Notes: generated from the sequence alone by a model not told the origin. Positions 416 to 58,659 are shown, counted from the first letter of the stretch. The stretch: 64,000 bases of DNA from Lepidodermella squamata (GCA_047495785.1 JBLDXI010000023.1:1364001-1428000); one strand, 5' to 3'. Made by a program: numbers and translations.

Positions 416-2140
416 ATGTCGCAAACGCAATTTAACGCCGATCAGGTCTCCTATTTAATGAAGGTAACGCAAAAGCAACGCTTTTTGTGCAGCTCTTTTT
501 ATTGTAAATGACAATTATTCTCCACTGGCTCAGTGCCTTGAGTTGATGCGAAAGCGCAACCTTACTAAGGATATTGCTGAGTTTATAGCGAAAAATATCG
601 GCACAACGGTTGTTAAAGTGCAAAAATGGTTTCGCACAAGAAGAAGGAGAAGAGTTAGAGAGAAAACTAAGAAAACTTGGCGTCTTGAAGATATCCTCGG
701 GAAAGAAAAAAGCAAATTGTTGACGTTGGAAGTGAAACGTGATCCCAAGTTGTTCAATGCGAGAAAGCAGCTGCTGGCTCGAAAATTTGGCCTTACCGAG
801 CGTCAAGTTGAAAGATTCTTCATCGGTCATCGCGTTCGACGGAAGACATATGTTCGTTTCAAGCTAAATTCTCAGCAAAATGAAATATTCGAGAAGGTAT
901 AACTGAGAGGCAATATTTGCTTAAAATTAGGACTGATTGTTATAGGAATTCAAACAGAATCCTGCCGCGTCGCTGCAAAGATTTAGAGAAGTGGCCAAAG
1001 CCGTGGGAGTAACATGTTATCAGGCCAGGCGTCTTCTTGGAGAACGACGAGCTCACTTGGGAATCCGCGGTAGAACAGGGACATTGGAGTTCGTTGGATT
1101 CACGGATTTTCAACTGGCTGAACTACAGGAAGCATTCCAAGCGACAGTGGTGAGGGGCGACAGGTTTGACGATGCTCTCTATCGAAGTTTGGCCGAGAAA
1201 ACCGGATTGAAAAAGACCGTAGTGAGGAATTGGTTCTCTAACAAGCGCAAATCAGCTGGCTTCGGAAAGAAAAGAGAAACTCTTAATCGAACCAGTGTCT
1301 GCTCTCTAAATGCTGTGAGTTGCAGCCTTGATCTTGAAGTTCTAAATTCTAAATTCAAATTTATTTGTCCATCAGTCACAAAAATATAAAAGAACAATAT
1401 AACATAATAACAACATAATAACATAATAACATAATTACAATTAAAAGTGTTTTTACTCAGGAGTTTGCCGAATCGAGTCGTTTGGAAGATGGCAGAGTGC
1501 AAGAAATTGCGAAAAAGTTGGGATTAACTTTCAGACAGGTTAAATGCTTTTTCGCCATGATGCGAAAACGATTGAGAACTGCGGAAAATAATCAATCCCT
1601 TCTTACACTGAAACGTAACCAGCGAAATGCGTTGACTAAGGTTTGATAGGGCTTACAATTCCAGTCTATGCCATTTTATCATTTCTTGTTCAGGAATTCA
1701 ATGAGAATCCAGATCTACAGGAAACTGGAATGACTCGTCTTGCTGAAAGGCTGGAAATCTCTGTTGATATGGTGAAACGTTTCTTCGACATCCACCGTCG
1801 TGCTAAAGCCAGAGGTCGTGGTTATATTCGAGTGACCTGCGAGCAGCGGGTTCTTTTAGAAAAGGTAGATGACTTGACAAGTTTAAAGTTTGAAGGGATT
1901 GCTTTGCTTCATCATTGTGATTCATTTGATTCAGGAGTTTGAAAACACCAAATTTGTAAAGCGTGCGCAAGCTGAACGCCTAGCTATATCAACGGGAATT
2001 TCGACCGTAAAGGCAAAAACAACTGAAAGTGTTTTTTCCTTCGAAATTTAATTTAATTTATTATTTAGATAAGGAAGTGGTTCAGTTCGAAACGCTTCTT
2101 TGAAAAAAAGAAACAGAAGAAAGCAGCAATCGGTTCATGA
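416..2140 (+). CDS. Seven-homeodomain protein, copy A (intact, ~426 aa)
   Basis: Exons 416-463, 534-896, 946-1314, 1461-1640, 1694-1864, 1935-2012, 2069-2140. All introns phase 0; GT-AG except intron 6 (GC-AG). Spliced frame is open and contains seven helix1/HTH units, e.g. FTDFQLAELQEAF...LAEKTGLKKTVVRNWFSNKRK and LARKFGLTERQVERFF. Confidence 0.88.
1341..1410 (-). mobile_element. ~70-bp LINE family B 3' tail inserted in intron 3 of copy A
   Basis: Matches the LINE-B 3' end at 35625-35695 (ttctaaattcaaatttatttgtccatcagtcacaaaaatataaaagaacaatataacataata); followed by short TAACA repeats. Confidence 0.85.
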
Positions 2141-2591
2141 GCATCATTCTGTCTCCTGTTAAACTGTTTTTGATTTTACATTTCACGTCAAATGAATACC
2201 GGGCGCGAGTTATCAGCTACCTATCTGATTATGGATGATTCATTGGACCCTAATTGATATTATATCAGTTTTGAATAATCAACTTAGGGCCGTTCTTTTT
2301 CAGTGTAGCGAAAGGTTTGTGATCGAGCCGTGATTAAAATTGGAAGAAATATTACATCATATTACATTACATCATAGACCTTACATCAATTGAAATGACC
2401 TTACTCTATCAATTTAGGCCGCTTCCTTACACAGGCGGCTTCTTTTGTAGCATGATGAATTCAATTTCAAATTGTCAGCCAGGAAGTTTCAGGTAATCTT
2501 TGCAAACAAAATTCTGAGTTAAGCGAATTTTTATGTCAATTTAGTACCAATCGTGGCAGATCGTTCACATTACTCGAGAAATGGCTCGAAG

Positions 2592-3578
2592 CTTTGTCGT
2601 TTCAGCACCGTTACCGTGAGGCTTATGCCCACCTCTGTCGTCTCGATGAGTTTTGTCCTACTTCTGTTGATCGCCTGACCTATATGAAGCTCCATGATGG
2701 CAGTGTTATGCCGCCATCTACTGCCGTCGATGATGCCCTGCTTGATTATTTCGTCAAACCGATGTCTCCGCACGTCGACCCCGATGTGGACGCTGCCACT
2801 CGCCGGTGGTGGCAACAAGTCGAGGACGCTGTCGTTGCAGATCCTGACCTTCGTGCTTCCGCTGTTATCCGCATGCCCACTCACGGCGAGTTTTCTGCCA
2901 GTCAACGGATGCTCGCTGATGCTGTTAGCCGTTTGAAGTCCTTCAAGTCCCCTGGCTTGGATGGTGTTCAAAACATCTACCTGAGGTGGGGTGGCCCTGT
3001 CCTGCAAACCCACATTCGTCGGCTGTTCAACATGTCTCTTGGCAGTCGCTACGTGCCTCAAGCGGGGAAAGAAGCGGCTGTTGTGCCTATACCGAAGGCC
3101 GGCAAGCCGCAGAATCATGTCTCGTCACAGCGTCCCATCTCCTTGCTACCGAATGACGCCAAGCTCCTGGAGTCGATCGTGTCTCGGTGGATGACTCAGT
3201 TTCTCGAAATTCAACACCTTCTGCCCGAGAATCGGTTTGCATTCCGTCCGCACCATTCCGCGCCAGATGTCCCACTTCGCATCGTTCATCGCATCCACGT
3301 CAACCGCTCCCTGCGCAAGAAGACTGTCGTGGCAAGCCTGGATGTTCAGGCGGCCTAGGATTCCGTGTGGCACGCCGGGCTGATCCATAAGATTGCCCAG
3401 GTGCCTCTCACGTGAAATTTGGTCGTCTGGTTTGCCGACTATCTTCGCAACCGTCGTCTGACAACGGGGTGCCGCAGGGTTCCCCGTTGTCGCCGCTTCT
3501 TTTTATACTATACACCGCCGAGGTGCTGTCCGCTGTCCGCACCAAGCTTAGCTGACACTTTGCTGCAGGCTTACGTTG
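2592..3578 (+). mobile_element. LINE family A ORF2 (RT N-half) fragment, decayed
   Basis: ORF 2594-3358 has KSPGLDG, RPISLL and LDVQAA*; near-identical to the RT at 26219-27715; stop at the Y of AAYDSVW. Confidence 0.9.
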
Positions 3579-3785
3579 ACTATTGGAGGATTCTAGGATC
3601 CAAGATCATTTGAGGAAATGGCGGCAAAAAATGTTTGTTAAGGTAATGATCAGAAATGTTAAATGTCTCTGATTACTGGCTCTTATTATAATAACGGATT
3701 TTAGGATTCAATGTGAATAATGAAAGAAAGCTTCGGTTGTGTTGTCTGTAGGTGAATTTCTCATATCTTCACTTTGTTTTACAAC

Positions 3786-5424
3786 ATGTTGCCAGCTTAA
3801 TGCCGGTCAGCGCTCTTACTTGGGGAACGTTACGCCGGGAATAATTCTTCATAATTATACTGTTATTCACTCATTGACTATTTTCAAATCTTCCCCAGTG
3901 CTTCGATTTAATGCGAGAGCGCAACCTTACAAAGGATATGGCTGAGTTCATAGCGAAAAAGATTGGCACATCTGTTCGTAAAGTGCAAAACTGGTTTCAC
4001 CCAAGAAGAAGAAAAGGCGTTGAAGGGGAAACTAAGAAGATTTCGCGATATGAAGATATTCTCGGGGAAGAAAACAGCGAATTGTTGGTGCTTGAAGTGA
4101 AAAATGATCCCAAACTGAGCAAGGGCAGACAGCAGATGCTGGCACAACGATTTGGCTTGACAGAGAGGCAGGTTGAAAGGTTTTTCTGCAAGCATCGCAT
4201 CCAACGAAGGCCTTGTGTTCCCTTGAAGTTAACATCCCAGCAAATTGAAAAATTTGAGAAGGTTTTTAACTGAGAACTTCGCTGTTTGACTAATCTGGTT
4301 CCTAATCTGGTGACGGAATTTTACAGGAATTCGAACAGAATCCCGGCGCATCACGTCAGAGATTGGGTGAAATTGCTGCAGCTCTGGGCATAACATGTAG
4401 TCAAGCCGAACTTCTTGTCGCAAAACGACGAGCTCAAGTGGGAATCTGCGGCAGAAGAGCCCCACCTAAATTGGAAAGAATCACAAATTCGCAATTGGCA
4501 GAACTGCAGGAAGCATTACAGTCAACAGTCGTGAGCGGCGATAGATTTGACGTCGCCCTCTTTCAAAAATTGGCCAAGAAAACTGGATTGAAATGGACTA
4601 TGGTCAGTAAATGGTTCTCTAACCAGCGCAAATCTGCTGGCCTAGCAAAAAAGCGAGAACGTCTCGATCCGAGTGGTATCCGCGACTTGGAGGCCGTGCG
4701 TTCAACTTTCAACTCTTGATCTTAGTTCACAATGTTAAAAATATTTTGTGTCTCAGGAATTCGCTGTATCGAGCTGAATTGAAGGCAGCAGAGTGCAAGC
4801 AATTGCTGGCTAGCTGGGATTAACTTCCGGACAGGTTAGATACTTTTTCGAAATCAAGCGGAAACATTTGAAAACTGGGAGGAATAAGCAATCCCCTCGC
4901 CGCAGACCAGCGAAATGCGTTGACTAAGGTTTGATTATTCTCACAATTCCAATCTTTGATCTTTATGTTTTTTTTTGTTCAGGAATTCAATGAGAATCCA
5001 GATCTACTGGAAACCGGAATAACTTGTCTGGCTGAAAGACTGGATATACCTTTTGATATTGTGAAACGTTTCTTCGAAATCCAAAATGGTAAAATAAGAG
5101 GCCCTGCTAAAGCTCCAGAAAAAAGCCCATTGACCTTGACCTGGGAACAGCGGCTTCTTCTAGAAAAGGTGATTAACTCAAAAGGTGATTCAAAGGATCG
5201 CTCTGTTTCATCCTTGAATTTATTTAGGAGTATGGAATCTCTAAATTCGTAACGCATGAGCAAGCTGAACGCATTGCGACATCAATTGGATTTTCGACTG
5301 ATTGGGCAATAATGCTTACACTTAATTTACGAGTTCCTTAAAAATTGCTTCCCCTTTTTAGGTACAGAGATGGTTCAGGAGGAAACGGTTCAGAAAGAAA
5401 CAGGAAGAATCTATGGGTTCATGA
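3786..5424 (+). pseudogene. Multi-homeodomain gene copy B, pseudogene
   Basis: Same 7-exon layout; 5-nt deletion in exon 1 (ATG TTG CCA GCT TAA) and in-frame TGA and TAG in exon 4. Confidence 0.85.
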
Positions 5425-6547: not shown

Positions 6548-6955
6548 AGCTTCGAAGTCATGCGCGATCGCACTCTGACCAGCGATATCGCAAGTCGAAT
6601 TTCAAAGAAGATTGGCATATCGGTTACAAAAGTTCAAAAGTGGTTTTACAACAGAAGAAAACGTGAAGAGCACCGCGGACCACCTCGGCGAGAAAGCATA
6701 AGGCAGTGGCAATGGCGTAAAATCATCGAGGTAATTCTACCCGTAGAGTTATTACCTGTGTGTATTTTTTCTTATTCGGAAGAGCGACAATACTAAAGAT
6801 TTTTTATGTTTACGATGACATGTTTAACTGAATATTCATTCGCATTCACCACCCCGGTAATCTTTATTAAGGAGGTCGATAAGCACTACGACCTTCCTCA
6901 GCGTGTACCAGCAGTAGCTAAGCTGGTGGCCGAAACTGGGCTGCAAGAGATTCAA
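6548..6955 (+). pseudogene. Divergent paralog fragment (HD1 plus HD2-like exons)
   Basis: Exon 6548-6730 SFEVMRDRTLTSDIASRISKKIGISVTKVQKWFYNRRK...IIE|gt; exon 6872-6955 EVDKHYDLPQRVPAVAKLVAETGLQEIQ|gt; phase-0 junctions; no flanking exons found. Confidence 0.65.
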
Positions 6956-7973: not shown

Positions 7974-8248
7974 ATGGCTGAGGTTATAGCGAAGAATATG
8001 GGCACAACGGTTTATAGAGTTCGAAACTGGTTTCACGCAAGAAGAAAATCAAGAGTTGAAGAAAAAGCTAAGAAGTTTTCGCGAATCGGCGATATTCTCG
8101 GGCAAAAACAATTCAAATTGTTGATGTCGGAAGTGCAACATGATCCCAAGTTGGTAAAGGCGAGAAAGCGGCTGCTAGCCCGAAAATTTGGCCTTGCCGA
8201 GCGCCAAGTTGAAAGATTTTTCGAAAAGCATCGCATCAAACGAAGGAC
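7974..8248 (+). pseudogene. Multi-homeodomain copy C, exon-2 fragment
   Basis: MAEVIAKNMGTTVYRVRNWFHARR...LARKFGLAERQVERFFEKHR; ends abruptly against the minus-strand gene. Confidence 0.8.
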
Positions 8249-8822
8249 TCAGAATCACCTTCGAAAGCCCGGTGATGTTGAAGGATGGCTTCAAACGGAA
8301 ACGGACTCCCATAGTCGGTTGGGACTGATCGGTTTCAGAGTACTCAGTGTGACGAGCCTTAGCTTGTTGGACCTCAGGTCAAAAATGGCGTACATCATCC
8401 TTTCTGATGTAGTACAACATTTTGGACAAAGTGCAGGTTGAACTGTCGATGATGATCACGTGTCGATCGTCCGAGCTCAATTTAACAGGCACGATGATGT
8501 CTGGGATCGGGTAGCTAACAAGTTCGCACTGGTCCCAGAAGGTGAAGGTAACATTGACCTTGGGCTGAGATCCTGAGACTACGACATAAGGGATATCAGG
8601 TGGGATTCCGTAGAGAAACTTCCCGGTTCCGAAATAACAACGCAGATTGTTCAGCCCAGGCATCTGACTGATAGCGTTTAAGTAAACGTCATTCTGAGGG
8701 TGGAGGGGCAGGGTGTCCAGCGGGGTGTTCCAAACGTGGTATCCAGCAATTGTGGGCGGGGAAGCTAAGGTGCTACCCACAAGGCTGAAACACAAGAAAA
8801 TGATAGCAGCAGGCGAAATCAT
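8249..8822 (-). pseudogene. Decayed intronless secreted-protein gene resembling a bacterial uncharacterised family
   Basis: Signal peptide MISPAAIIFLCFSLVGSTLA, then WNTPLDTLPLHP, YGIP, PYVVVSGSQPKV, YPIP, DRHVIIID. After a frameshift near 8395 it continues AIFDLRSNKLR...PTMGVRFRLKPSFNITGLSKVIL. Confidence 0.65.
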
Positions 8823-11510: not shown

Positions 11511-11717
11511 CAGCATGCAAAGACTGGGGACCATGGTTCGCACATCAACCATGGGAATAGTTGACTCATAAGCCTTGTGATGATGTCTGATATCAAATGC
11601 TAAATGTCGAAAGGCAATTTGCATCCATAAAGAGTATGAGTATGAGTAGTAATCAAAAATGTTATGACTCAATTTCAATGACTTTTTATCTGTAGGTGAA
11701 TCTCTTGTTCAATTTGA

Positions 11718-13111
11718 ATGACAAAGGTTAAAGAGAGGATTAAGAAGATTTGGCGTTTCAAAGATATTATTCTAGGGGAAGAGAAAAACAAATCGTTGAT
11801 GTTGGAAGTGAAACATGATCCTAAACTGAGCAAGGGCAGACAGCAGATGCTGGCACTACGATTCGGCTTGACAGAGAGACAGGTTGAAGGATTCTTTCGC
11901 AAGTATCGCAGCAAGCGAAGGGCTTTTGTTCGCGCGTTGACATCCAAGCAAAATGAGAAATTCGAGAAGGTTAAACTTAAACTGATGAGCGCTATTTGCC
12001 TAATATGTTGATGAAATTTTGTAGGAATTCGAACAGAATCCCGGTGCATCACGTCAGAGATTGAGCGAAATTGCTGACGCTTTGGGCATAACATTTAGTA
12101 AGGCCGCACGTCTTGTCATGAAACGACGAGCTCAAGCGGGAATCCGCGGTAGAACGGCAAAACCTGAATCCAATAGAATCACGAATACTCAACTGGCAGA
12201 ACTGCAGGAAGCATTCAGATCCACAGTGGGGAGGGGCGATAGCTTTGACGATGCTCTCTATCAAAGCTTGGCCATGAAAACTGGATTGAAAAAGACTGCG
12301 GTCATGAGATGGTTCTCTAACCAGCGCAAATCCGCTGGCCTCGGAAAAAAATTGAAAACTCTCGATGCGAGTAGCATCCGCGCCCTGGATGCCGTGCGTT
12401 CAACTCTTGATCTTAGTTCACAATGTTGAAAATATGTTGTGTCTCAGGAATTTGCTGTATCGAGCCGATTGGAATTCGGCAGAGAGCAAGCAATTGCTGG
12501 CAAGCTGGGATTAACTTCCGGGCAGGTTAGATACTTTTTCGAAACCGAGCGGAAATTTACAACTGCGAAAAACAAGCAATGCCGTCGCCGCAGACTTAAA
12601 CCGGACCAACGCAACGTGTTGACTAAGGTGTGATTAGGCTCATAATTCCAATCGTTGACGTTTTTTGCTCAGGAAATCAATGAGAATCCAGATCTACAGG
12701 AATCTGGAATAACACGTCTGGCTGAAAGACTGGAAATACCATTTAACATTGTGAAACGTCTCTTCGAAATCCAACATGGCAAAACAAGAGGCCGCCAAGT
12801 TCGAGAAAAAAGCTCTCGATTGACTTGGGAACATCGGCTTCTTCTGGAAAAGGTGATTAAATCGATAAGTTGCAATATTCAAAGGATTGCTTCGTTTCAT
12901 CTTTCAATTTTTTTCAGGAGTATGAAATCTCTAAATTCGTAAAACGTGCGCAAGCTGAACGCCTTGCTACGTCAATGGGATTATCGACTGATAGGGCAAT
13001 AATGCTTACACTTTATTTCCTTTTACGATGCCTTCTCCCTTTTAGGTAAAGACATGGTTCAGGTCGAAACGGGTTCGTGAAAGAAAGAAACTGGGGGTGA
13101 TCGGCTCGTGA
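11718..13111 (+). CDS. Multi-homeodomain copy D, six-HD variant lacking HD1 (open, ~374 aa)
   Basis: Exons 11718-11969, 12025-12393, 12448-12627, 12673-12852, 12918-12995 (GC donor), 13046-13111; no stops. Exon 1 and HD1 are deleted and an ATG lies ~20 nt after the conserved tgtaggtgaa motif. Confidence 0.75.
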
Positions 13112-14732: not shown

Positions 14733-16294
14733 ATGACGCCAACCAAACTTGATGACGATCAGATCTCTCACTTGATGAAGGTAACCCCTTTAACAAGTTC
14801 TTTATATCGATGATTACTATTTGTAAATTTCTGCTCAGTGCTTCGAATCAATGCGCAATCGTGCTCTCTTTAAGGACATCGCTGAGTCCATCGCGAAAAC
14901 GACAGGCACATCAGTTGACAAAGTTCGAAATTGGTTTCGCACGATAAGAAGAAAAGGAGTTAACAGTGAAACTGAGAAGAATCGGCGATTTGAGGACATT
15001 CTCGGGGAAGAAAAAACGAACTGTTGAAAGGGGAAGTGAAACGTGATCCCAAGTTGGCCAATGCGAGAAAGGAGCTGCTGGCACGACGATTCGGCCTTTA
15101 CGAGCGTCAAGTTGATAGATTCTTCAGAAAGCATCGCATTCAACGAAGTTTTCACTTGAAGCTAACATGTCAGCAGAATGAAATATTCGAGAAGGTATAA
15201 TCGAGATGCGATATTTGCTCAGTATTAAGATTACTCGCCACAGGAATTCAAAAAGAATCCTGCAGCTAACTTGTAAAGATTCATCAAAGTGGCCGAAGCG
15301 GTGGGCATAACATTTTATCAAGCTAGGCATCTTGTTGAAAAACGGCGAGCCCTCTTGGGAATCTGCGATAGAACAGGGACATTTGAATTCGTTGGATTCA
15401 CGGATTTTCAACTGGCAGAACTCCAGGAAGCGTTCCAGTCCACAGTTCTGAGAAGCGAAAGCTTTGACGTCGCCCTTTTTCAAAGTATGGCCAAGAAAAC
15501 CGGTTTGAAAAAGAACGTGATCAGGAATTGGTTCTTTAACCAGCGCAAATCTGCTGGCCTCTTAAAGAAACGAGGAACTCTTGATCAAGCTATAGTCTGC
15601 ACTTTGAATGCCGTGAGTGGTGCCCTTGGTCATGATATTGCAATTTCCCGTAAGGTTTGTGTCTCAGGAGTTCGCTGTATCAGGCCGAATGGACGCGGAG
15701 AAAATGCAAGCAATTGCGGACAAGTTGGGATTAACTTTCAGACAGGTTAAATGCTTGTACTACAAGCGGAAACGATTGGAAACTGCGAAAAATAGGCAAT
15801 CATGTCTTCGCAAGCTGAAACGTGACCAGAGGAATGCGTTAGCTAAGGTTTGAGGGGGCTTATAATTGAAATAGTTCTATTACTTTTATTCAGGAATTCA
15901 AAGATAATCCAGATCTACAGGAAAGTGAACTAACTCGTCTTGCTCAAAGATTGGAGATCCCTCTTAATATTGTGAAATATTGTGAGATCCTGGTAAAAGT
16001 CGATTGACCAGGGAGCAGCGGCTTCTCCTAGAAAAGGTGAATGACTCGATTATAAGGGATTGCTTTGTTTCATCAATGTGATTCAAAATATTCAGGAATT
16101 TCGAATCTGTGAATTCGTAACTCACGAACAAGCTGAACGCCTGGCAACATCGATAGGATTTTCGACGTCGAAGGCAAATTGATGCTTAAACTGCTTTTTC
16201 CTAGGAAAATTGCTTCAATTATTTAGGTACAGAGGTGGTTCAAAAACGATTCTTTGAAAAGCAGAAACAGAAAAAAGAAGAAATTGGTTCATGA
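14733..16294 (+). pseudogene. Multi-homeodomain copy E, pseudogene
   Basis: 7-exon layout; 1-nt deletion in exon 2 (GAA AAA ACG AAC TGT TGA) and further indels. Confidence 0.85.
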
Positions 16295-16519
16295 ACATTG
16301 TTGTTCCCGATTTTGGATTTTGAATTTGGGACCCTCGATTGCTATGACATCAGTTTTGAATAGCTCAACGAAGTGCTGTTCATTTTCAGTGTCGAAAATG
16401 CCCATCGTGTTTTCATTGTGATTAAATTGGCATCATAGAGAACGTAGTATCAAATATTTATTCAGAGCGTAATTTTTACTTTTATTGTTTACTAATTTCA
16501 ACTCTTGCTTAGTGCTTCG

Positions 16520-19050: not shown

Positions 19051-19540
19051 GGTATTTCATATTCAAATTATCAGACAGGCAGTTTTAGTGATAATCTATG
19101 GTGATCTATCTAGGTCTAAGGTGATCCTTGCGAAGAATATTGCTGAGTTGAGTGAATTTTTATGTTAGTTTAGTACTTACCAATCATTGCGAATCTTTGG
19201 CTTAACTCAGGTTATGGCTCGAGGAATTTTACTGGAAGTTGGCATGTCGATTCCTCTCAGGTTCGCAACTTGTCTCGAGTAAGCAAAAAGTTGAAGAGAA
19301 TGATGATACCTCCTCATTTGATTTTCTTTTTGATTTTGAATTGGATTTTGGTTTCATAAAATAATCGATGATCTGGCGGCATCACATTTTTTGTAAAAAA
19401 AATGAAACTGTCATCTGTCACTGATATGTCAACCCTCATTGCAAATGCGAATACGAATGATTAACAGGAAGTTTCGGTTGTGTTGTCTGTAGGTGAATTT
19501 CCTATCTGAACACTTTGAATAATCAATTCTGTTCGACAAA

Positions 19541-19729
19541 ATGTTGCCGACCCAGCTGAAAGCCGGTCAGCGCTCTTACTTGTTGAAGGTAACGCCAGGA
19601 ATAATGCTTCATAATTATACTAATATTCACAAATTTCAATTCTTACTCAGTGCTTCGATTTGATGCGAAATCAATGCGAAACGGTTCGTTGAAAAGCATA
19701 AACGGAAAAAAGAAGCTATCCGTTCATGA
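19541..19729 (+). pseudogene. Copy G: exon 1 and start of exon 2 fused to an exon 7 by deletion
   Basis: Exon 1 MLPTQLKAGQRSYLLK|gt, then tgcttcgatttgatgcgaaa joined directly to tcaatgcgaaacggttcgttgaaaag...tcatga. Confidence 0.8.
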
Positions 19730-20062
19730 GCATCATCGGTTTTCACTTTGCATTTGCATTAGGAACCTGGTTGATATGACATCAGATTTGAAAAGATAAA
19801 CAAATGATCGTTTTTCAGTTTAGAATAATGCACATCGTGGTTGAATCGTTATTAAATTGGGAGAAATATACCTTAAGATATGAATTGAAATAACATCACA
19901 CTTTCAATTAGGTTTAATTCTTCTTAGCATGATGAATTTGCATTGCTAGTAATTTAAAGCTTCAGGCAAGCAGTTTTATTGATAAATCTTAGGTAATCTT
20001 TGCAAAAATTATGAAGCTAAATTCTAAATTCTCGTTCTGTAAGCGTTTCTGTTATTTTAGTC

Positions 20063-21903: not shown

Positions 21904-22004
21904 AGAAATGGCGATTTCAATCGTTCAATTTTGTGATTCGCTTGTAGATGATTCACTGGAATTTTCCAATACCCGGCTTAAACAACTAAATTTTCTTTGG
22001 AATC

Positions 22005-25717: not shown

Positions 25718-25798
25718 GTTGTATATTTATGATTGAGCCGTGATTGAAATATACCTTCCAACAATTAAATATACCTTATGAATTGGAGCCTCACTCAG

Positions 25799-48486: not shown

Positions 48487-49747
48487 ATGTTGCCAACCCA
48501 GCTGAAAGCCGATCAGCGCTCTTACTTGTTGAAGGTAACGCCATGAATAATGCTTCAAAATTATACTATTATTTACTAATTTCAAATCTTACTCAGTGCT
48601 TCGATTTGATGCGAAATCGTATTCTTACTAAAGATATAGCTGAGCTCATAGCGAAAAAGATTGGCACATCGGTTGTGAAAGTGCGAAACTGGTTTCACAA
48701 AAGAAGAACAGAAAAAGACGTTGATGGGAAAGCTATGAAGATCTTGCGATTGAAAAATATTCTCGGGGAAGAAAACAACGAATTGTTGATGCTCGAAGTG
48801 AAAAATGATCCTAAACTGAGCAAGGGCAGACAGCAGATGCTGTCACGACGATTCGGCTTGACTGAGAGCCAGGTTGAACGATTCTTCCGCAAGCATCGAA
48901 GCCAACGAAGGGCACGTGTTCAATTGAAGTTGACATCCCATCTAATTGAAGAATTCGAGAAGGTTAAAACGAGGAGCGCTATTTGTTTTATCTGGTGGTT
49001 GATTTTTTTTACAGAAATTCAAGCAGAATCCTGGCGCTTCAAAGAAAAGGTGCCGCGAAATGGCTGAATCCTTGGGCATAACAGTTAATCAGGCCACACG
49101 CCTTGTCTTAAAGCGACGAGCCCAAGTGGGATTACGTGGTAGAAAAGCAAAATCTGAATCAATTAGATTTACGAATTTTCAGCTGGCGGAACTACAGAAA
49201 GCATTCCATTCAACAATGGCAAGGGGCGACAGATTTGACGATGCACTTTATGGAAGTTTGGCTGAACAAACCGGATTGAGAAGGTATTGGGTCAGGAATT
49301 GGTTTGTTACCAAGCGCAAATCTGTTGGCCTCGGAAAGCGATTAGCTCTTGATCAAAACACTGCCTGCGTTTTAAATGCTGTGTTCACCCTTGGTGGAAG
49401 GTTGAAATATTCCAGATGTATTATTCTTCAGGATGGCCGAGCGCAACTGACCTGGGAACAGCGACTTGTTCTGGAGAAGGTGGTTTTATTAGTTTGAAGA
49501 GTTGGAGATATTTATTAGCTTCATTATGCTAATAATTTAGGAGTATGAAACCTCCAAATTCGTAAAGCACGTGCAAGCTGAACGCCTAGCTGCCTCAATC
49601 GGATATCCCACCGAGAAGGCAATAACGTTTACACTTTATTTCCGAGTTCTTTCTTTATTCCTTTCATTTTTGTAGATAAAGAAGTGGTTCAGCTCGAAAA
49701 GAGAGAATGAAAAAAAGAAACAGAAGAAAGAAGCATTAGGTTTGTGA
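48487..49747 (+). CDS. Multi-homeodomain copy M, five-HD variant (HD1-4 plus HD7; open, ~325 aa)
   Basis: Exons 48487-48534, 48597-48962, 49015-49380, 49432-49479, 49541-49618 (GC donor), 49676-49747. Exons 4 and 5 have collapsed into one 16-codon exon. Confidence 0.75.
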
Positions 49748-50663: not shown

Positions 50664-52336
50664 ATGTTGCTAACCCAGCTTAAAGCCGACCAGGTCTCTT
50701 ACTTGATGAAGGTACCGCCAAGAACAATGTTAATATTTTCGCTGTGATTGTTTGCTAATTTCAACTCTTGCCAGGGCTTCGATTTGTTGCGAAAGCGCAA
50801 CCTTACAAAGGAGATGGCTGGGTTCATAGCGAAAAAGATTGGCACATCAGTTGGCAAAGTTCGAAACTGGTTTCACAATAGAAGAAGGAAAGGAGGTGCA
50901 GGGAAAACTAAGAAGATTTGGCGATTTGAAGATATTCTCGGGGAAGAAAAAAACAAGCTGTTGGCGTCTGAGGTGAAACATAATCCCAAGTAATTCAAAG
51001 CGAGAAGGCAGCTGCTGGCGCGAGAATTCGGACTGACAGAGCGTCAAGTTGAGAATTTCTTCTCGAAGCATCGTATCCAACAGAACACATTCGTTCGCGT
51101 GAAGTTGACACAGCAACAGAAGAAAATATTTAACAAGGTTAGTTGTGAAGCGACGCTAAGTAGAAACAGCCAAAATTGTAATTTTATTTATTTTTTCGAC
51201 TTCTCACTTTCCCGGATACTCTAGAATTTTATCTGATTGTTTCTCAGGAATTCCTACAGAACGCAAGCACGTCATACCATAGACTTTGCGAGATCGCCGA
51301 GATTGTGGGCATAACATTCAATCAAGCCAGACGTCTTGTCACTATAGGAAGAGAGCAAATGGGAATCCGTCGCGAAATGGAAACGTCAGAATCAATTGGA
51401 CTCACTAATTGCCAACTGGCTGAACTGCAGGAAGCATTCCAGTCAACAATGCTGACGGGCGAAAGCTTTGACAATGCCCTCTATAGAGGTTTGGCAAAGA
51501 AAACTGGATTGAAAAGGACTGTGGTCAAGAATTGGCTCTCTAACCGGCGCAAATCAGTTGGCTTCGCAAGGAAGCAAGAAACTCTCCATCACAGCATTAT
51601 CGGCGCTCTAAATGCTGTGAGTTTTGAGGAAACGTCCTAATGATACAAGTGAAAGCTTTTATCTCAGGAATTCGCTGTATCGAGCCGGATGGAAAACCAC
51701 AGACTGCATGCAATAGCCGAAAATTTTGGATTGACTTTCGCACAGATTAGAAATTTTTTCGCTAATACGCGAAGGCACTTAAGGACAGCGAGAAATGAGC
51801 AATCCTGTAGCCGCAAACTGAAACGTGGCCAACGAAATGCGTTGACTGAGGTTTGATGGAGCTTGCAAATTATAATCTATGCTCTTTCATTATTCGTTCA
51901 GGAATTCAATGCGAATCCTGATTTACAGGAAATCGGAATAACTCGTATTGCTGAAAGACTGGAAATCCCTTTTGATACTGTAAAACGTTTCTTCAAAATC
52001 CACCGTGCTAAAGGCACTGGCCGTGGTAAAATTCGGGTGACCTGGGAGCAGCGGCTTATTCTAGAAAAGGTGACTGACTAGATTATTTTGAATATTGCTT
52101 TGTTACATATTTGTGATTCAATCGGTTCAGGAGTTTCGAAACTCCAAATTCGCAACACGCGAGCAAGCTGAACGCCTAGCTACATCGATGGGGTTTTCGA
52201 CCGAGAAGGCAAAATATAGCTTGCACTGATTTTTGCTGAAAAATCTTTTAAATCAATTGTTTAGATAACGAGGTGGTTCGCTTGGAAACGGTCGTTCGAA
52301 AAACAGAAACCGAAGAAAGAAGCAATCGCTTCATGA
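50664..52336 (+). pseudogene. Multi-homeodomain copy N, nonsense codon in exon 2
   Basis: TAA at 50991-50993; the other exons appear open with intact splice sites. Confidence 0.8.
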
Positions 52337-54201
52337 TCATCATTGTTTCTCGTGCTATACTGTTGTTAATTTCACATCTCACGCTAAATGACTACCAGGC
52401 GCGAGTTGTAAGTTGTAAGTTGTAAGCAACTTGATCTCTTTTTTATTTGAGATTTAGGAATTCGTTTGACTATATACCCATATTCACGACAATTATTTGG
52501 AAAGAATGTGGGCTTGCAGCAATACAAATCTAGCAACAGGTAAATATTAGAAAGCATCTACAGAAAACATCTCAAATAAAAAAGGAAAATGGTCGCAAAT
52601 TCTTCGCGCTATTGTTCATACAGTGTGTCCGCGAAATACGCTTATTTTGTCCCTTGTCCCCTTATTCATCAATGAACAATAAATGTTTGAATTTAGAATT
52701 TACGCACCTATTTTTAGACTTGCAAGGCTAGTCACAGATGTTGCTCAAGGCGTGTGACTTTTACGGCTAGTTTTCAAATATAACGGTTTTCTCGCACGTG
52801 CCACTTTGAAAAAAGCAGGATAGTTTTTACGAGTGTGCTATTATTTGCACCCACACGCGGGTGCATCCGATTTGCTAGCTACACCCTGAAGGTGCAACCA
52901 TTTTGCTCGCTACACCCTATACAAGCAATAAGGAATTGGGGAAAAGCCGGCTGTCGGTGCGGCGAGGTGTACAGAAGCACTTAAACAACGGCAATTGCGA
53001 TTAAGCTAGATTACGCACCTGGGATGACTTAGCAGTTAACACAATGGGGGTGACTTTGACGTGCCAGAATTGGGTGACTTTTGGCATGCCAAAAATCGGA
53101 GATAGTAAGATAAGAACCCCGTGAGCAGGGTACCATTGGATAACCCGAAGAAAGGCCAGCCTGGATGTGCATAATGCGCATCTTAACAACCTTGTCTGGG
53201 AAATGGAAGAAAAGTCGTGAAATTTTTTAATTTCTATATTAATATTAATTAAGTTTTTCGATTTGCACTGGAAATCAGCTTGCGTGCGCGCATTCAGCCC
53301 TATGTTCAAGGCCTCGAAAACGCGACTCATGACACTGATCAGCGGCACCGGGCAGATTAGTAACTCATTAGCGCGCAATAAATGGCTCTTTAGCCGCCGC
53401 GCGCGGTCAAGTGGGTGTAGCATAGCGCAGCCTGTTTTTCCTACAAAAGTGGGTTTTATTTTACGCAAATTTTTGTTAATCAAGTCGCTGTTAATTCTTA
53501 AAGATAATTTTATCTCATCTAAATAGTTATCGGAAAAATAAAATAAGAGTAACGCGACCTTGACTAGCCGTTGCCATGGTAACGGGCGACGCCGCCGTAA
53601 ACATTTCTCGAGTTCTAGATTCAACCAGCAAACCAAGGTCTGAACTCGGGTTTTGATGCATTTTAATGCTGTTTTTTCTTGGCAGCAATCGGAGATACGC
53701 TCATTCTACCTGCTTGTCACTTCAAACCAGGTTACGGAAGGTTCTAAAATGGAACTAACAGGTTCCAGCGATCAAGAATAACTGAAAACTGAAGGAAATG
53801 AACCCAAGTGATGTTTCATGCAAGAATTTGCTAAGGCTTCATAGAGCAAAGTCGAGGCTTTTTGAAGGCAATTGAGTAAAATTATGAAAACTTTATTGAT
53901 AGTCATGTTTAAAAGCAGTTCGAGCTAAAAAGGATCACAATCAAACGAGGGTTGCGAGATGAGCTACGAAGCAACGAACAATCGAGTTTGAAGTTCGACA
54001 AAGTCTGAGAAACTTCGGGCGGACGTGCAGCATAATTTGTGATGTAACAAGACGAGGGATTACACTACTTGCTGGTCTTCGAAGCTGGGCGAATCGAGTT
54101 AGATCCACTTTCGGCAGATTCCTCAAGATAGCTCTGGGTGATCGAAGGTTCGAATAAAGCTTAAACTGATTTTTTCATCGAAAATGTTCTTGATTGTTCA
54201 G

Positions 54202-54265
54202 GTAAAGATGTGGTTCAATTTGAAACGGTTCTTTGAAAAGCAGAAACGGAAAAAAGAAAGATCGG
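54202..54265 (+). pseudogene. Orphan exon 7 remnant fused to the upstream module
   Basis: ttcag|VKMWFNLKRFFEKQKRKKE. Confidence 0.7.
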
Positions 54266-54618: not shown

Positions 54619-56688
54619 ATGTCTCCAACCCAACTTATAGCCGGTCAGCGTCAGAGACTTTGATTTGATTGTGATTTGATTTGATTTAGGTCATTTTTGG
54701 ATGATTTGACTTACTGATGATTTGATTTACAAAATTTCAAGATGATTTGATTTGCAAATGATTTAGCCCGCTTAATTTACTGATGATTTAGAGTATTCAA
54801 CACTCTCGGAACTCCCCCTGTTGCTAAACATGAGAACTGATATTTGACTCGAAAACCTTTTTTCCAAAATGTCTGGAGCAATTCAACTACTTGTAGACGC
54901 ATTCTGCTATAACCAACCTTAAAATGTGAAAGAATCTCTCGAAAATACCCTAATACTCATATTTCGCTGGGCGAAAGATTTGATTGATTTACCATGGATT
55001 TTTGGGTGATTTGATTTTAAATGATTGATTTTACAAGACCTGTGATTTACTGAAGAAATCAAATCAAATCAAAGTCACTGGTCAGCGTTCTTACTTGTTG
55101 AAGGTACCGCCAAGAACAATATTATTATATTTTTATACTGTTATTACTAATTTCAACTCTTGATAAGTGCTTTGATTTGTTGCAAAATCGCAACCCTTCA
55201 AAGGATATGGCCGAGCTCATCGCGAAGACGATTGGCACATCAGTTGTTCAAAATTGGTTTTACACCAGAAGAAAAAATATATTTAAAGAGAAAACTTCGA
55301 AGATTTGGCGATTTGAAGATATTCTCGGCGAAAAAAAAAACGAAATGTTGATGCTGGAAGTGAAAAATGATCATAAACTGAGCAAAGGTAGAAGGCAGAT
55401 GCTGGCGCGACGATTCGGCTTGACAGAGAAGCAGGTTGATGGGTTCTTCTGCAAGCATCGAAGCCAACGAAGGGCATACGTTCGCTTGAAGTTGACATCC
55501 CAGCAAAATGAAAACTTTGAGAAGGTTAAACTGAGAAGTGCTATTTGCCTAATCTGGTGATGATTGATTTTCTAAAGGAATTTGAGCTGAATCCTGCCGC
55601 TTCAGATCAAAGATGCCGCGAAGTGGCTGAAGCTGTTGGCATATCATTCAGTCAGGCCCAACGCCTTATTTTAAAACGGCGAGCCAAAGGTGGAATCCGC
55701 AGTTATACAGCGAAATCTGAGTCCTTTCGAGTCACGGATCCTCAACTCGCAAATCTAGAGGAAGCATTCCTGTCAACAGTAATGAATGACGATAGGTTTG
55801 ACAATGCTCTCTTTCAAAGATTGGCCAATAAAACCGGATTGAGAAAGTACGTGGTCAGGAATTGGTTTATTACCCGGCGCAAATCTTTTGGACTCGGGAA
55901 GAAACGATTAAATCTCGATCAAGCCAGTGTCTGCGTTTTAAATGCCGTGAGTTTACCTTTGATGGAAAGTTGAAATGTTTCAGAAGTATTGTTCTTCAGG
56001 AGTTCGCTGAATCGAGCCGACTGGAGGACGGCAGAGCGCTAGCGATTGCGGAAAAGTTGGGATTAACATCAGAAGTGGTTAAAAAACTTTTCGTTATGAA
56101 GCGGAATCTACTGAGAACTGCGACAAATAAGCCGTCCCGTCGTCCGAGACTGAAACTTGACCAGCGAAATGCCCTGAATGAGGTGAGAAAAGGCCGTTTT
56201 CAAATCTATAACGTTTAATGATCATTTTTTGTTCAGGAATTCAATAACAATCCAGATCTACAGCAAGCTGAGAAAATTCGTTTGACTGAAAGACTGGGAA
56301 TCGCATTAAATACTGTGAAACGTTTCTTCAACCGTGCTAAAGCTCGAGGTTCAGGAAAAAGTCGGAAAAAAATCGACCCGACCTGGGAGCAGCGGCTTCA
56401 TCTAGAAAAGGTATTGGCTCGAAAAGCTTGAAAATTGAGCTGGTTCCTTTGCTTAATGACTGTGATTCAATTTATTTAGGAGTTTAAAACCTGCAAATTC
56501 GTAACTCACCAGCAAGCTGAGCGCCTATCGACTTCAATTGGATACCCAACTGTGAAGGCAATAAAGCTTCCCTTCCATTTCTGAGATCATTTTTATTTCT
56601 CTTCCTTTTTGTATAGATAAAAGAGTGGTTCAGGTCGAAGCGGAAGCATGGAAAAACGAAACAGAAGGAAAATGCACTCGGTTCATGA
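54619..56688 (+). pseudogene. Multi-homeodomain copy O, exon 1 disrupted by a hAT MITE; exons 2-7 appear open
   Basis: Exon 1 split at GTCAGCGT; downstream exons and the GC-AG intron are intact. Confidence 0.78.
54652..55080. mobile_element. hAT-type MITE (429 bp)
   Basis: TIR CAG(A/T)GACTTTGATTTGATT, 8-bp TSD GTCAGCGT, internal GATTT repeats. Confidence 0.9.
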
Positions 56689-56929
56689 TGTTTTTCTTAT
56701 GTTGTAATTTTAATTAGCCTGACTTCCCTAGCTATTTCCTCTGATATTGGGTTGTTCACCCCGCTGATATGACATTAGTTTTGAACTTTGAACAACACAA
56801 AGCCGTTAATTTCAGAATGCCAGAGAATCGTGGTTTGAAGTTTAGTGAATTTACTTTTTAAATTTATCGAAATTGGAAAGACCTTAACCCTATTATTTGA
56901 AGCCGATGATTCCCACCTTAGCATGGCGA

Positions 56930-57362
56930 AGTCATCGGGATCGTCAAGTCGTCGTCAATTGCGTGGTGCCGCAAGGTACCTCGTTGTCGTCGCTTCTTTT
57001 TATACTATACACCGCCGATTTGCTGTCCGCCCCAAGCGTGGATGGCCCGTTGCTGCAGGCCTACGCGGACGATCTAACTGTCGTCGGCGAGAGTGGCACG
57101 TTCCCTGCTGCTCAGCGTCGCCTCCAATTGGAGATCACCGTATTTCAGGTTGTGCTACGAAGTGGCGCCGGCAGTTTAATCTCGCGTAGAACGAAATTAT
57201 GCTCTTTGGTAATGCGTCCGTCGATGTTCGGCTCAACGGAGCCATGATCCCGCAAGTCGGGTCGATACGTGTTCTCGGTGTTCACTTGGACCCTAAACTG
57301 ACGTGGAAAGTTCATTTGGACATGATCTCTGACCGCTGCCGCAGGAATCTGGGTATTTTCAA
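56930..57362 (+). mobile_element. LINE family A RT fragment
   Basis: VPQGTSLSSLLF...QAYADDLTVV...VLGVHLDPKLTW. Confidence 0.85.
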
Positions 57363-57468
57363 CTTTGAGAAATGGCGATTTTAATCGTTCAATTTTGGGA
57401 TTCGCTTGTAGATGATTTACTGGAATTTTCCAATACCCGACTTAAACAACTAAATTTTCTTTGGCATC

Positions 57469-58659
57469 ATGTCGAATACTAAATTTAATGCAGATCAGGT
57501 CTCTTACTTGAACAAGGTAACGCCAAGACCATGCTTTGAACAGATATTTTCATTTCAATTACTTACTCAGTGGTTTAAGTTTATGTGAAAGCGCAAACTT
57601 ACCAGGGATATCGCTGAGTTGATAGCGAAAAAGATTGGCACATCGGTTGGTAAAGTTCAAAACTGGTTCCGCACAAAAAGAAGTAAAGAAGTTGAAGAGA
57701 AGATGATTGTGCGATTTAAAGATATTCTCGGGGAAGAAAAAAACGAGTTGCTAGCGTCGGAGGTGAAACATAATTCCAAGTTGGTCAAAGAGAGAAAACA
57801 GCTGCTCGCACGAGAATTTGGCCTTACAGAGCGCCAGATTGAAAATTTCTTCCGCAAGCATCGCGTCCAACAGAACACATGCGTTCGCACGAAGTTAACA
57901 CAGCAGCAGAAGGAAATATTCAAGAAGGTTTGTTGCAAAGCGATATGCCAGAAACAAGCCAAAGTTTTCAGTTCATTTATAGTTTATTTCTTTACCCTTT
58001 ATTTTCCCAGATACTTTGGTACAACTATTTTTAATTTGATATTTTTTCATCAGGAATTCCTGCAAAATGCAAGCGCGTCACGTCATAGATTCCGAGAAAT
58101 CGCCGGGATTGTTGGCATAACATTAAATCAGGCCAGATATCTTGTCGCTACAGGACGAGCGCAAGTGGGAATCCGCTGTAGAAGAACAAAATCTGAATCC
58201 ATCAGATTCACTGATTGCCAACTGGCAGAACTACAGGAAGCATTCCAGTCAACAATGGTGAGGGGCGACAGCTTTGACGATGTCCTCTATAGAGGTTTGG
58301 CAAAGAAAACTGGATTGCAAAAGACTGTGGTCAAGAATTGGATTTCTAACCGGCCTAAATCAGCTGGCTTCACAAAGAAACAAGAAACTCTCGATCACAG
58401 CAGTATCTGCGCTCTAAATGCTGTGAGTTTCGATGAAATGACGTTTTAGTGATCGATATAAGCTTTGTCCTAATAGGAATTTGCTGTGTCGAGTCGAATG
58501 GAAGACGGCAGAGTGTAAGCAATTGCTGAAAAGCTTGGATTGACTTTCAGACAGGTTAAAAATTTCTTTGCTACTAAGCGAAGGCACTTAAGGACTGCGA
58601 GAAATGAGCAATCCCGTTGCCGCAAACTGAAACTTGACCAACGAAATGCTATTCCTGAG
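57469..58659 (+). pseudogene. Multi-homeodomain copy P, pseudogene truncated after exon 4
   Basis: Near-identical to copy I; TGA early in exon 2 and TAA in exon 4. Confidence 0.85.

What the first reader, a model, noticed from the sequence alone, without database searches (positions are those of the whole stretch)
416..58659. Tandem array of ~16 genes encoding 'polydactyl' seven-homeodomain proteins
Seen: manual splicing turns dozens of short ORFs into one 7-exon gene. Its ~425-aa product is seven back-to-back ~60-aa homeodomain-like units with no other domain. It is repeated head-to-tail on one strand over 58 kb as intact, domain-deleted and dead copies. Known: most homeobox proteins have one HD; DUX has two, and multi-HD proteins (ZHX/ZFHX, some divergent C. 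elegans ceh genes) are uncommon. I do not recognise this family. Inference: a lineage-specific birth-and-death family using HDs as modular repeats, analogous to tandem C2H2 zinc-finger clusters. Possible roles include germline or early-embryo regulation, or recognition of transposons and satellites.
Basis: partly seen in the sequence, partly recalled or inferred. Interest (0 to 1): 0.93.

Follow-up and report, generated by a model that had tools for sequence, protein, structure and literature searches.

The report
Tandem array of seven-homeodomain genes
A 58-kb stretch of an unidentified short-intron animal genome holds about 13 head-to-tail copies (plus fragments) of a gene whose 49-kDa, very basic product is seven back-to-back, highly divergent homeodomains; only three copies are still open, expression is untested, and the nearest described precedents are single odd genes such as C. 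elegans ceh-100.

Summary
On the + strand, 416-58659 carries 13 recognisable copies and at least 6 fragments of one 7-exon gene. Splice sites sit at homologous positions in nearly all exons that survive, including a GC-AG intron at homeodomain position 44/45. Copies A (416-2140, 422 aa) and J (31055-32881, 421 aa) are fully open. L (48487-49747) is an in-frame two-domain deletion (about 321 aa). The rest are damaged or dead. An independent homeodomain profile finds exactly seven domains in the spliced products: six solid, the third degenerate. An AlphaFold model of exon 3 matches only homeodomain structures.

Exons evolved under constraint: dN/dS about 0.45, fold core 0.18, introns twice as divergent. 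Canonical base-contact positions are the most variable (omega 0.83), which is not proven positive selection. Asn51 is missing from almost all units, so canonical DNA reading is doubtful.

No close relative turned up among 1.84 billion cluster representatives or in JGI metagenome contigs. Distant multi-homeodomain proteins exist in nematodes, and an unnamed ENA assembly has its own array of 8-homeodomain genes. Precedents are C. elegans CEH-100 (12 homeodomains) and amphioxus Mux. No RNA data were available. Scan notes report three more such arrays elsewhere in this genome. Verdict: real, a new variant of a known oddity, function inferred.

The parts
416..2140 (+). Copy A, intact 7-exon gene, 422 aa. 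Exons: 416-463, 534-896, 958-1314, 1461-1640, 1694-1864, 1935-2012 (GC donor), 2069-2140 (stop included).
   Evidence: All exons are open, borders are ag/gt (gc at intron 6), and all introns are phase 0. The independent profile finds 7 homeodomains. pI is 10.9.
3786..5424 (+). Copy B, pseudogene. Exon 1 is broken and exon 4 has stops and a frameshift.
6560..6796 (+). Fragment C1: the start of an exon-2-like piece (helices 2-3 of unit 1).
7974..8250 (+). Fragment C2: exon-2-like piece (unit 1 helices 2-3 plus unit 2), 81% identical to A.
11605..13111 (+). Copy D. The 5' part is broken; exons 3-7 (12037-13111) are open.
14733..16294 (+). Copy E, pseudogene. Frameshifts in exons 2, 5 and 7, and a stop in exon 3.
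16396..18154 (+). Copy F. Exons 1-2 are broken; exons 3-7 (16935-18154) are open. It starts about 100 bp after E ends.
19540..19760 (+). Mini-remnant: exon 1, the start of exon 2 and the tail of exon 7.
20453..21329 (+). Copy G. Exons 1-3 only, cut off by a LINE fragment. The exon 3 acceptor is ctg.
22005..24282 (+). Copy H, pseudogene. Exon 3 acceptor lost (caa), a stop in exon 4, and a 612-bp insertion in exon 6.
25778..26107 (+). Fragment I: exon 2 only, cut by a full-length LINE.
31055..32881 (+). Copy J, intact 7-exon gene, 421 aa. Exons: 31055-31102, 31178-31534, 31782-32135, 32189-32371, 32433-32612, 32681-32758 (GC donor), 32816-32881.
   Evidence: All exons are open. Seven homeodomains are found. 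It is 58% identical to A.
33140..33320 (+). Solitary unit-4-like homeodomain remnant between J and K.
33902..35433 (+). Copy K. No recognisable exon 1 and one stop in exon 2; exons 3-7 are open.
48487..49747 (+). Copy L, an open, domain-deleted gene of about 321 aa with 5 homeodomains. Exons: 48487-48534, 48597-48962, 49027-49380, fused 49432-49479, 49541-49618, 49676-49747.
   Evidence: The in-frame 48-nt exon keeps its ag and gt.
50664..52336 (+). Copy M. All seven exons are in frame, with a single stop in exon 2 near 50991.
54160..54256 (+). Exon-7-like remnant.
55168..56688 (+). Copy N. Exon 1 is frameshifted and the exon 3 acceptor is ctg; exons 2-7 are open.
57469..58659 (+). Copy O. Exons 1-4 only, with stops in exons 2 and 4. 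It is a near-copy of H (dS 0.056).

Best explanation
This is a real, lineage-restricted gene family that grew by tandem and two-gene segmental duplication. Most copies are now decaying.

Each gene encodes a very basic protein of about 49 kDa that consists only of seven tightly packed homeodomain folds, spaced 52-66 residues apart with no other domain. The seven-unit architecture is older than the array: units are only 10-32% identical to each other, whereas paralogs are about 58% identical.

The likeliest function, which is inferred and not shown, is nuclear nucleic-acid binding in which several homeodomains of one chain contact DNA together. Paralogs would differ in target preference because the residues that normally read bases are the ones that vary. 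Because Asn51 is mostly lost, the reading mode is probably not the canonical TAAT type, and some units may serve only as spacers or protein-contact modules.

In this array, three copies (A, J and the 5-domain L) could still make protein.
For: Shown:
- Strand-specific array (55 versus 1 motif hits).
- Homologous splice sites, including a GC-AG intron at position 44/45 that restores exact homeodomain spacing. Unit 7, spliced that way, scores 32 bits.
- Exactly seven profile hits per protein: six with i-E from 1e-12 to 1e-5, and the third weak.
- The AlphaFold model of exon 3 has pLDDT 80-89 over unit 4. The top 50 PDB matches are all homeodomains, for example Dlx5 4rdu (TM 0.80-0.82, rmsd 1.2 A over 58 columns) and the DUX4 double homeodomain over 105 columns.
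- By sequence, most PDB matches are PRD-like homeodomains such as Aristaless and ALX4; the single best hit is an unrelated 'CAP REPEAT' chain with no stretch passing on its own.
- Median dN/dS is 0.45 over 51 pairs with dS about 0.6. Introns are about twice as divergent as exons.
- Omega is 0.18 at core positions, 0.49 elsewhere and 0.83 at base-contact positions.
- Entropy per position is lowest at 48, 16, 39, 53, 34, 30, 20 and highest at 50, 43, 2, 6, 47. Contact positions versus the rest give p=1.5e-4; core versus the rest gives p=2e-5.
- Arg53 and W/F48-F49 are kept in all units except the third.
- pI is 10.8-10.9 with 22-24% Lys+Arg.
- About 110 bp upstream of the ATG is alignable among copies.

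Inference: two 1266-nt reading frames across 7 exons would not stay open by chance at this divergence.
Against: - There is no transcript evidence at all. The single public run that holds the locus is genomic DNA, with contigs that span introns.
- Only 3 of about 13 copies are open.
- Asn51, almost invariant in DNA-binding homeodomains, survives only in unit 4 of 6 of 11 copies (A has it, J and L do not) and sporadically elsewhere.
- Unit 3 has LL/LV in place of WF and is barely detected.
- Omega at contact positions is below 1, so relaxed constraint explains the variability as well as diversifying selection does.
- No clear poly(A) signal lies within 260 nt of most stop codons.
- AlphaFold confidence is moderate (mean pLDDT 70 for exon 3 and 61 for exon 2), and whole-protein geometry was not modelled.
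Confidence: 0.65

Rival explanations
1. The whole array is a graveyard. The family was once functional, here or at another locus, and every copy in this window, including A, J and L, is now untranscribed or on its way to decay.
For: About 75% of copies carry stops, frameshifts, lost acceptors, truncations or insertions. LINEs and a P-element-like transposase are inserted in the array. Pairs that include pseudogenes show the same omega as pairs of open copies, so much of the measured constraint is historical. Scan notes report other arrays in the genome that could hold the working genes (unverified).
Against: A and J keep 422 and 421 codons open across seven exons, with every splice site intact, at dS about 0.55 from each other. 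L kept its frame and both splice sites after a deletion. Core residues of A and J are intact.
Confidence: 0.15
2. The proteins are made but are not sequence-specific DNA readers. The homeodomain folds would serve as protein-protein or RNA-binding or chromatin-scaffold modules, as is held for HOPX and for some ZHX/Homez homeodomains (my own knowledge of those proteins, not tested here).
For: Asn51 is lost in almost all units, unit 3 lacks WF, and three of the seven units have F48 instead of W48. Near-neutral change at 'contact' positions (omega 0.83) fits positions that no longer read bases. The language-model search placed 'Homeodomain-only protein' clusters among the nearest, at score 0.80, which is only a lead. 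Units follow each other with almost no linker, and AlphaFold draws helix 3 running into the next helix 1, although at low confidence.
Against: Arg53 and many Lys/Arg at positions 52-57 and in the N-terminal arms are kept, and pI is about 10.9. Among 351 homeodomains of other multi-homeodomain proteins, only a third keep Asn51, so its loss is usual for this kind of protein and not specific to a dead binder.
Confidence: 0.15
3. The repeat is part of, or carried by, a mobile element or satellite rather than a host gene family.
For: The region is transposon-rich. Homeodomain-like helix-turn-helix folds occur in many transposases. Pfam gives weak side-hits to HTH families.
Against: The copies carry no transposase, integrase or reverse-transcriptase domain. 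All are in one orientation with spacers of 0.1-1 kb. They have seven exons with conserved introns, are 69-81% identical rather than near-identical, and show codon-level constraint. The reverse transcriptases present belong to separate GC-rich LINEs, mostly on the other strand.
Confidence: 0.03

Closest known systems
C. elegans CEH-100 (12 homeodomains), CEH-99 (4) and CEH-83 (5): divergent, species-restricted multi-homeodomain genes (Hench et al. 2015, PMC4448998; Burglin and Affolter 2016, PMC4901127; Reilly and Hobert 2020, PMC7718597)
   Same: These proteins are made almost only of tightly packed, divergent homeodomains, some shorter than 60 aa. They have no orthologs in close relatives, sit in duplication-rich regions with pseudogenes, and have unknown function. 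The best database hit of the window's profile is a 10-homeodomain protein of Caenorhabditis nigoni.
   Different: There is no orthology. Identity to the nematode and other multi-homeodomain hits is 21-35%, with several out-of-register alignments. The C. elegans genes are single genes or pairs, whereas here one fixed seven-unit architecture is amplified to about 13 copies in one array, with more arrays reported in the genome. The intron pattern differs: phase 0 at position 18/19 in five units, plus GC-AG at 44/45.
Amphioxus Muxa/Muxb, orphan multi-homeobox genes (Takatori et al. 2008, as cited in PMC6118893)
   Same: They are orphan, lineage-specific genes with several homeoboxes and no other class-defining domain.
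   Different: They could not be compared by sequence here because no Mux sequence was retrieved. They are two genes, not an array.
ZF-class multi-homeodomain proteins: ZHX1-3/Homez (4-5 homeodomains) and ZFHX/ZFH-2
   Same: They carry several divergent homeodomains per chain, some lacking canonical DNA-contact residues. ZHX1 and ZHX2 homeodomains appear among the structural and sequence matches.
   Different: Those proteins have C2H2 zinc fingers and long linkers and are ancient, conserved single-copy genes. The window's proteins have no zinc finger and almost no linkers.
DUX4 and other double-homeobox genes in tandem arrays (D4Z4)
   Same: DUX4 has tandem PRD-like homeodomains in one chain, and its gene copies lie in a head-to-tail array. 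The DUX4 double homeodomain is the top structural match for exon 3, and unit 4 is nearest to PRD-like homeodomains by sequence.
   Different: DUX4 has two canonical homeodomains that keep Asn51, a linker and a C-terminal activation domain. Its intronless copies sit in a near-identical macrosatellite. Here the paralogs are old (dS about 0.6) and have seven exons.
KRAB and other tandem C2H2 zinc-finger gene clusters
   Same: This is an analogy only. Both are clustered, fast birth-and-death families of proteins built from repeated small DNA-binding folds, with most variation at the residues that normally read bases.
   Different: The fold is different. There is no effector domain such as KRAB. 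Positive selection is not demonstrated (omega 0.83). The number of repeats per protein is fixed rather than variable, apart from the deletion in L.
Undescribed array of 8-homeodomain genes in public assembly ENA ERZ26273096 (locus L002, 10001-18479; paralog on L003)
   Same: It is a tandem array of multi-homeodomain-only genes: three open (506-517 aa, 8 homeodomains each, about 50% identical) and one broken into three ORFs. This is the same birth-and-death picture.
   Different: Those genes are intronless, have 8 units that score much higher against Pfam, and the contig has 37% G+C. They are only about 22% identical to copy A. The organism is unknown.

Membership tests
Homeodomain superfamily (Pfam PF00046) | Sequence match to the homeodomain profile | tested here: met
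   Pfam Homeodomain scores 22.8-44.9 bits on single exons against a cut-off of 22.9. An independent profile gives 7 domains per spliced protein with whole-protein E 3e-47, though unit 3 reaches only i-E about 0.005.
Homeodomain superfamily (Pfam PF00046) | Three-helix fold with helix-turn-helix | tested here: met
   This is shown for unit 4. The AlphaFold model of exon 3 matches Dlx5, Aristaless, Engrailed and others at TM 0.8 and rmsd 1.1-1.2 A, and all top 50 PDB matches are homeodomains. The other units were not modelled whole because they span introns and a spliced sequence cannot be passed by reference.
Homeodomain superfamily (Pfam PF00046) | Core residues L16, F20, W48, F49 and R53 | tested here: met
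   These are the least variable columns (entropy 0.18-0.41 bits). Position 48 is W in units 1, 4 and 7, F in units 2, 5 and 6, and L in unit 3. R53 is kept in all units.
Homeodomain superfamily (Pfam PF00046) | Asn51, the base-contacting residue of DNA-binding homeodomains | tested here: not met
   Asn51 is present only in unit 4 of 6 of 11 copies and sporadically elsewhere. Only 117 of 351 homeodomains in other multi-homeodomain proteins keep it. This bears on function, not on fold membership.
CEH-100/CEH-99-type nematode multi-homeodomain genes (orthology) | Collinear sequence similarity beyond the generic homeodomain signal | tested here: not met
   The best profile hit is only E 2.5e-14 summed over 8 stretches. 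Blastp identity is 21-35% with several shifted registers. CEH-100 itself was not retrieved.
ZF class (ZHX/Homez, ZFHX) | C2H2 zinc fingers together with homeodomains | tested here: not met
   Pfam finds only homeodomain and HTH families. The protein is fully tiled by seven homeodomain units.
PRD-like class (for unit 4) | Class-diagnostic residues and tree placement with PRD-like homeodomains | tested here: inconclusive
   Nearly all the PDB sequence matches that pass are Aristaless, ALX4, Paired and DUX4, but only at E 4e-5 to 4e-3; the top-scoring hit is an unrelated 'CAP REPEAT' chain (E 7e-07, no stretch passing on its own). Structural identity is 35-38%. No class phylogeny was made. The conserved intron is at 44/45 rather than the 46/47 position usual for PRD genes (the latter from my own knowledge).
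Transposase-derived HTH or mobile element | Catalytic domain, terminal repeats, dispersed near-identical copies | tested here: not met
   There is no catalytic domain. Copies lie in one orientation in tandem, at 69-81% identity, with codon constraint.

The most novel reading that the evidence does not exclude
This genome has evolved a homeodomain-based counterpart of the polydactyl zinc-finger system: dozens of 7- and 8-homeodomain genes in at least four tandem arrays. Each protein would read a long composite DNA site with several homeodomains at once, and paralogs would diversify at positions 2-6, 47, 50, 51 and 54 to follow fast-changing targets such as transposons or satellites. The unrelated 8-homeodomain array in another public assembly would then be a second, convergent instance.
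Probability: 0.15. Interest if true: 0.85.

Novelty: new variant of a known kind. Interest (0 to 1): 0.6.

Why it matters
Homeodomain proteins almost always carry one homeodomain. Proteins built solely of many homeodomains are known from a handful of orphan genes whose function nobody has established. This family has a fixed seven-unit plan, many paralogs of graded divergence, a constrained fold core and variable 'reading' positions. That makes it a natural series for asking two questions: whether tandem homeodomains can be used combinatorially like zinc fingers, and how a homeodomain behaves without Asn51. If the other arrays noted in this genome and the independent array in the ENA assembly hold up, amplification of multi-homeodomain genes is a recurrent and so far undescribed way in which animals enlarge their transcription-factor repertoire.

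Tried and rejected
Splicing therefore remains untested.
- Taxon identification failed. LINE ORF2 found only unnamed metagenome or Logan proteins at up to 62% identity. The MpaB-like ORF and the P-element-like transposase found nothing. There were no Rfam families or tRNAs.
- The JGI metagenome scan with the exon 3 profile found no relative. The ESM Atlas gave only generic homeodomain clusters at scores of 0.81 or below.
- The exon 2 AlphaFold model (pLDDT 61) was judged too weak to search with.
- Positive selection at contact residues was not supported: omega is 0.83, below 1.
- The first splice choice for intron 6 (GT donor at 2007) was rejected. That GT is not conserved, it would shorten the helix 2-3 turn by two residues, and the G|GCAA donor six bases downstream is present in all copies.
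- The mobile-element reading was rejected (see rival explanations).
- Canonical poly(A) signals were not found within 260 nt of most stop codons, which is uninformative.

Full report
**What is there**

The window is eukaryotic DNA of about 42% G+C, with two blocks of 55-60% G+C. A loose pattern for the homeodomain recognition helix hits + strand frames 55 times and - strand frames once. Copy A (400-2300) aligns to 13 further + strand places at 69-81% identity. The alignments run through exons and introns alike.

I aligned 13 copies and projected A's exon borders onto them. Acceptors (ag) and donors (gt) fall at the same columns in nearly all exons that survive, and every intron is phase 0.

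The sixth intron is the exception to GT-AG. The GT I first took in A is not conserved. Six bases downstream, every copy that has the exon reads G|GCAA. Using that GC donor restores the exact helix 2 - turn - helix 3 spacing of a homeodomain and places the intron at position 44/45. The spliced seventh unit then scores 32 bits against an independent profile.

**Gene model and product**

A has exons 416-463, 534-896, 958-1314, 1461-1640, 1694-1864, 1935-2012 and 2069-2140, giving 422 aa. J (31055-32881) gives 421 aa and is 58% identical to A.

The protein starts at position 1 of the first homeodomain and ends 15 residues after helix 3 of the seventh. The position-48 anchors are spaced 52-66 residues apart, so there are practically no linkers and no other domain.

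Five units (1, 3, 5, 6, 7) are split by a phase-0 intron between positions 18 and 19. Units 2 and 4 are unsplit. Units are only 10-32% identical to each other, so the seven-unit plan is much older than the array. The products are very basic: pI 10.8-10.9, with 92-101 Lys+Arg.

**Are the units homeodomains?**

Pfam Homeodomain matches individual exons at 22.8-44.9 bits against a cut-off of 22.9.

I built a profile from 351 homeodomain segments of non-window proteins and searched the spliced products with it. A, J and M each give exactly seven domains. Six have i-E from 1e-12 to 1e-5. The third reaches only about 0.005 and has LL/LV where WF should be.

An AlphaFold model of exon 3 (end of unit 3, all of unit 4, start of unit 5) has mean pLDDT 70, and 80-89 over unit 4. 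Its 50 best PDB matches are all homeodomains. Examples are Dlx5 at TM 0.80-0.82 and rmsd 1.2 A over 58 columns, and the DUX4 double homeodomain over 105 columns. By sequence, most of the solved matches are PRD-like homeodomains (Aristaless, ALX4, Paired, DUX4), though only weakly; the top-scoring hit is an unrelated 'CAP REPEAT' chain. The exon 2 model was too uncertain to use.

**State of the copies**

- Open: A, J and L. In L, a deletion from mid exon 4 to late exon 5 left a 48-nt exon (49432-49479) with its ag and gt and in frame. The predicted product is about 321 aa with five homeodomains.
- One lesion: M has a single stop in exon 2.
- 5' damage with exons 3-7 open: D, F and K. N has a frameshift in exon 1 and a lost acceptor.
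- Dead: B, E, H (lost acceptor, a stop, and a 612-bp insertion in exon 6), O, and G (cut by a LINE fragment).
- Six smaller remnants.

A tree of exon 3 gives four clades: (A,E,K), (B,D,J), (F,G,L,N) and (H,M,O). The neighbour pairs G-H, L-M and N-O each join the third and fourth clades, so a two-gene module was duplicated repeatedly. H-O has dS 0.056 and G-N has dS 0.12.

**Selection**

Median dN/dS over 51 pairs is 0.45, with dS about 0.6. Intron distances are about twice exon distances.

I split codons by canonical homeodomain role; the assignment of positions to roles comes from my knowledge of Antennapedia and Engrailed complexes. Omega is 0.18 for core positions, 0.49 for the rest and 0.83 for base-contact positions 2, 3, 5, 6, 47, 50, 51 and 54.

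Amino-acid entropy among paralogs is lowest at positions 48, 16, 39, 53, 34, 30 and 20, and highest at 50, 43, 2, 6 and 47. Contact positions versus the rest give p=1.5e-4, and core versus the rest gives p=2e-5.

The fold has therefore been maintained while the usual reading surface changed freely. This fits diversification of targets, but it equally fits a surface that is no longer constrained.

Asn51 is missing from nearly all units. It is also missing from two thirds of homeodomains in other multi-homeodomain proteins.

**Relatives**

A profile of exon 3 from 11 copies was searched against 1.84 billion cluster representatives. No hit was below 1e-30 and only 4 were at or below 1e-10.

Many of the 64 weak hits are themselves multi-homeodomain proteins:
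- a 1335-aa, 10-homeodomain protein of Caenorhabditis nigoni;
- a Steinernema carpocapsae protein;
- probable mis-joined tandem genes of Peromyscus;
- several unnamed proteins from ENA assemblies.

Identity to A is 21-35%, with shifted registers, so these are not orthologs. JGI metagenome contigs hold no relative.

One ENA contig (L002) carries its own tandem array of four intronless 8-homeodomain genes, one of them broken. A fifth paralog lies on another contig.

**Literature**

C. elegans CEH-100 has 12 tightly packed homeodomains, CEH-99 has four and CEH-83 has five. They lack orthologs and sit in duplication-rich regions with pseudogenes (PMC4448998, PMC4901127, PMC7718597). Amphioxus Muxa and Muxb are listed as orphan multi-homeobox genes (PMC6118893). 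Full-text searches found no description of arrays of 7- or 8-homeodomain genes.

**What could not be done**

- The only public run that holds the locus is DNA, so there is no evidence for or against transcription and splicing.
- The organism stayed unidentified.
- Spliced proteins could be analysed only inside scripts. Whole-protein structure prediction and whole-protein database searches were therefore not run.

**Earlier scan notes**

First-reader notes on this window agree with what I found independently: the helix-1 intron pattern, the GC-AG intron and the variable recognition helix. Notes on other pieces of the same genome report three more arrays of 7- or 8-homeodomain genes. I could not check those.

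**Verdict**

The structural interpretation is supported, and the functional interpretation is plausible but untested. The kind of protein is known from isolated orphan genes. The scale, the fixed architecture and the pattern of variation make this a new variant worth following up.

Noticed in passing
L002:10001-18479 and L003:551-2215 (ENA assembly ERZ26273096): An unrelated public assembly holds a tandem array of intronless genes, each encoding 8 homeodomains. Three are open at 506-517 aa and about 50% identical; one is broken into three ORFs. A 554-aa paralog lies on another contig next to F-box-like genes. I found no description of this in the papers searched.
   Followed up: partly
window 1335-1435; also 6479-6553 (-) and 35619-35695 (+): A short interspersed repeat of about 75-95 bp sits in intron 3 of copy A, with 96-97% identical copies elsewhere in the window. 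The DNA run shows about 7-fold higher word depth and many loose ends there, so it is a high-copy element.
   Followed up: partly
window 26219-29983 (-) and 35960-39531 (-): Two GC-rich (55-60%) non-LTR retrotransposons are inserted in the array. Each has a zinc-knuckle ORF1 and an endonuclease plus reverse-transcriptase ORF2; the second ORF2 is open over 956 aa. 5'-truncated fragments of the same family lie at 2594-3600, after copy G and before copy O. The nearest database proteins are unnamed metagenome or Logan sequences at up to 62% identity.
   Followed up: partly
window 43875-45296 (+): An open 473-aa ORF carries the P-element/THAP9-type transposase domains (RNase H N and C parts plus the GTP-binding insertion domain). 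The word-based protein search found no relative.
   Followed up: partly
window 9422-10402 (-): An intronless 326-aa ORF inside the array, on the opposite strand, weakly matches the MpaB/Lcp oxygenase catalytic domain (E 2.9e-6), a family that is mostly fungal and bacterial. No homolog was found by the word-based search. Next to it (8379-8822, -) is the ORF that a scan note calls a decayed gene of bacterial origin; Pfam finds nothing in it.
   Followed up: partly
window 23490-24100: A 612-bp insertion interrupts exon 6 of copy H. It has no convincing terminal inverted repeats and its nature is unknown.
   Followed up: partly
window 20453-24282, 48487-52336, 55168-58659: The neighbour pairs G-H, L-M and N-O each join the same two clades of the family tree, so the array grew partly by duplicating a two-gene module. 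G-H and N-O also share a LINE fragment between the two genes.
   Followed up: yes
proteins P0001 and P0004 (Caenorhabditis nigoni CAO4371525.1 and CAO4371523.1): Two unnamed C. nigoni proteins of 1335 and 981 aa, with near-adjacent accession numbers on one chromosome-scale contig, are both multi-homeodomain proteins (10 Pfam homeodomains in the first). They may be relatives of the ceh-99/ceh-100 kind outside C. elegans.
   Followed up: no
351 homeodomain segments of the non-window hits: Across multi-homeodomain proteins of several organisms, only about one third of homeodomains keep Asn51, while W48, F49 and R53 are kept in 85-92%. Loss of Asn51 seems to be a general trait of such proteins.
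   Followed up: partly
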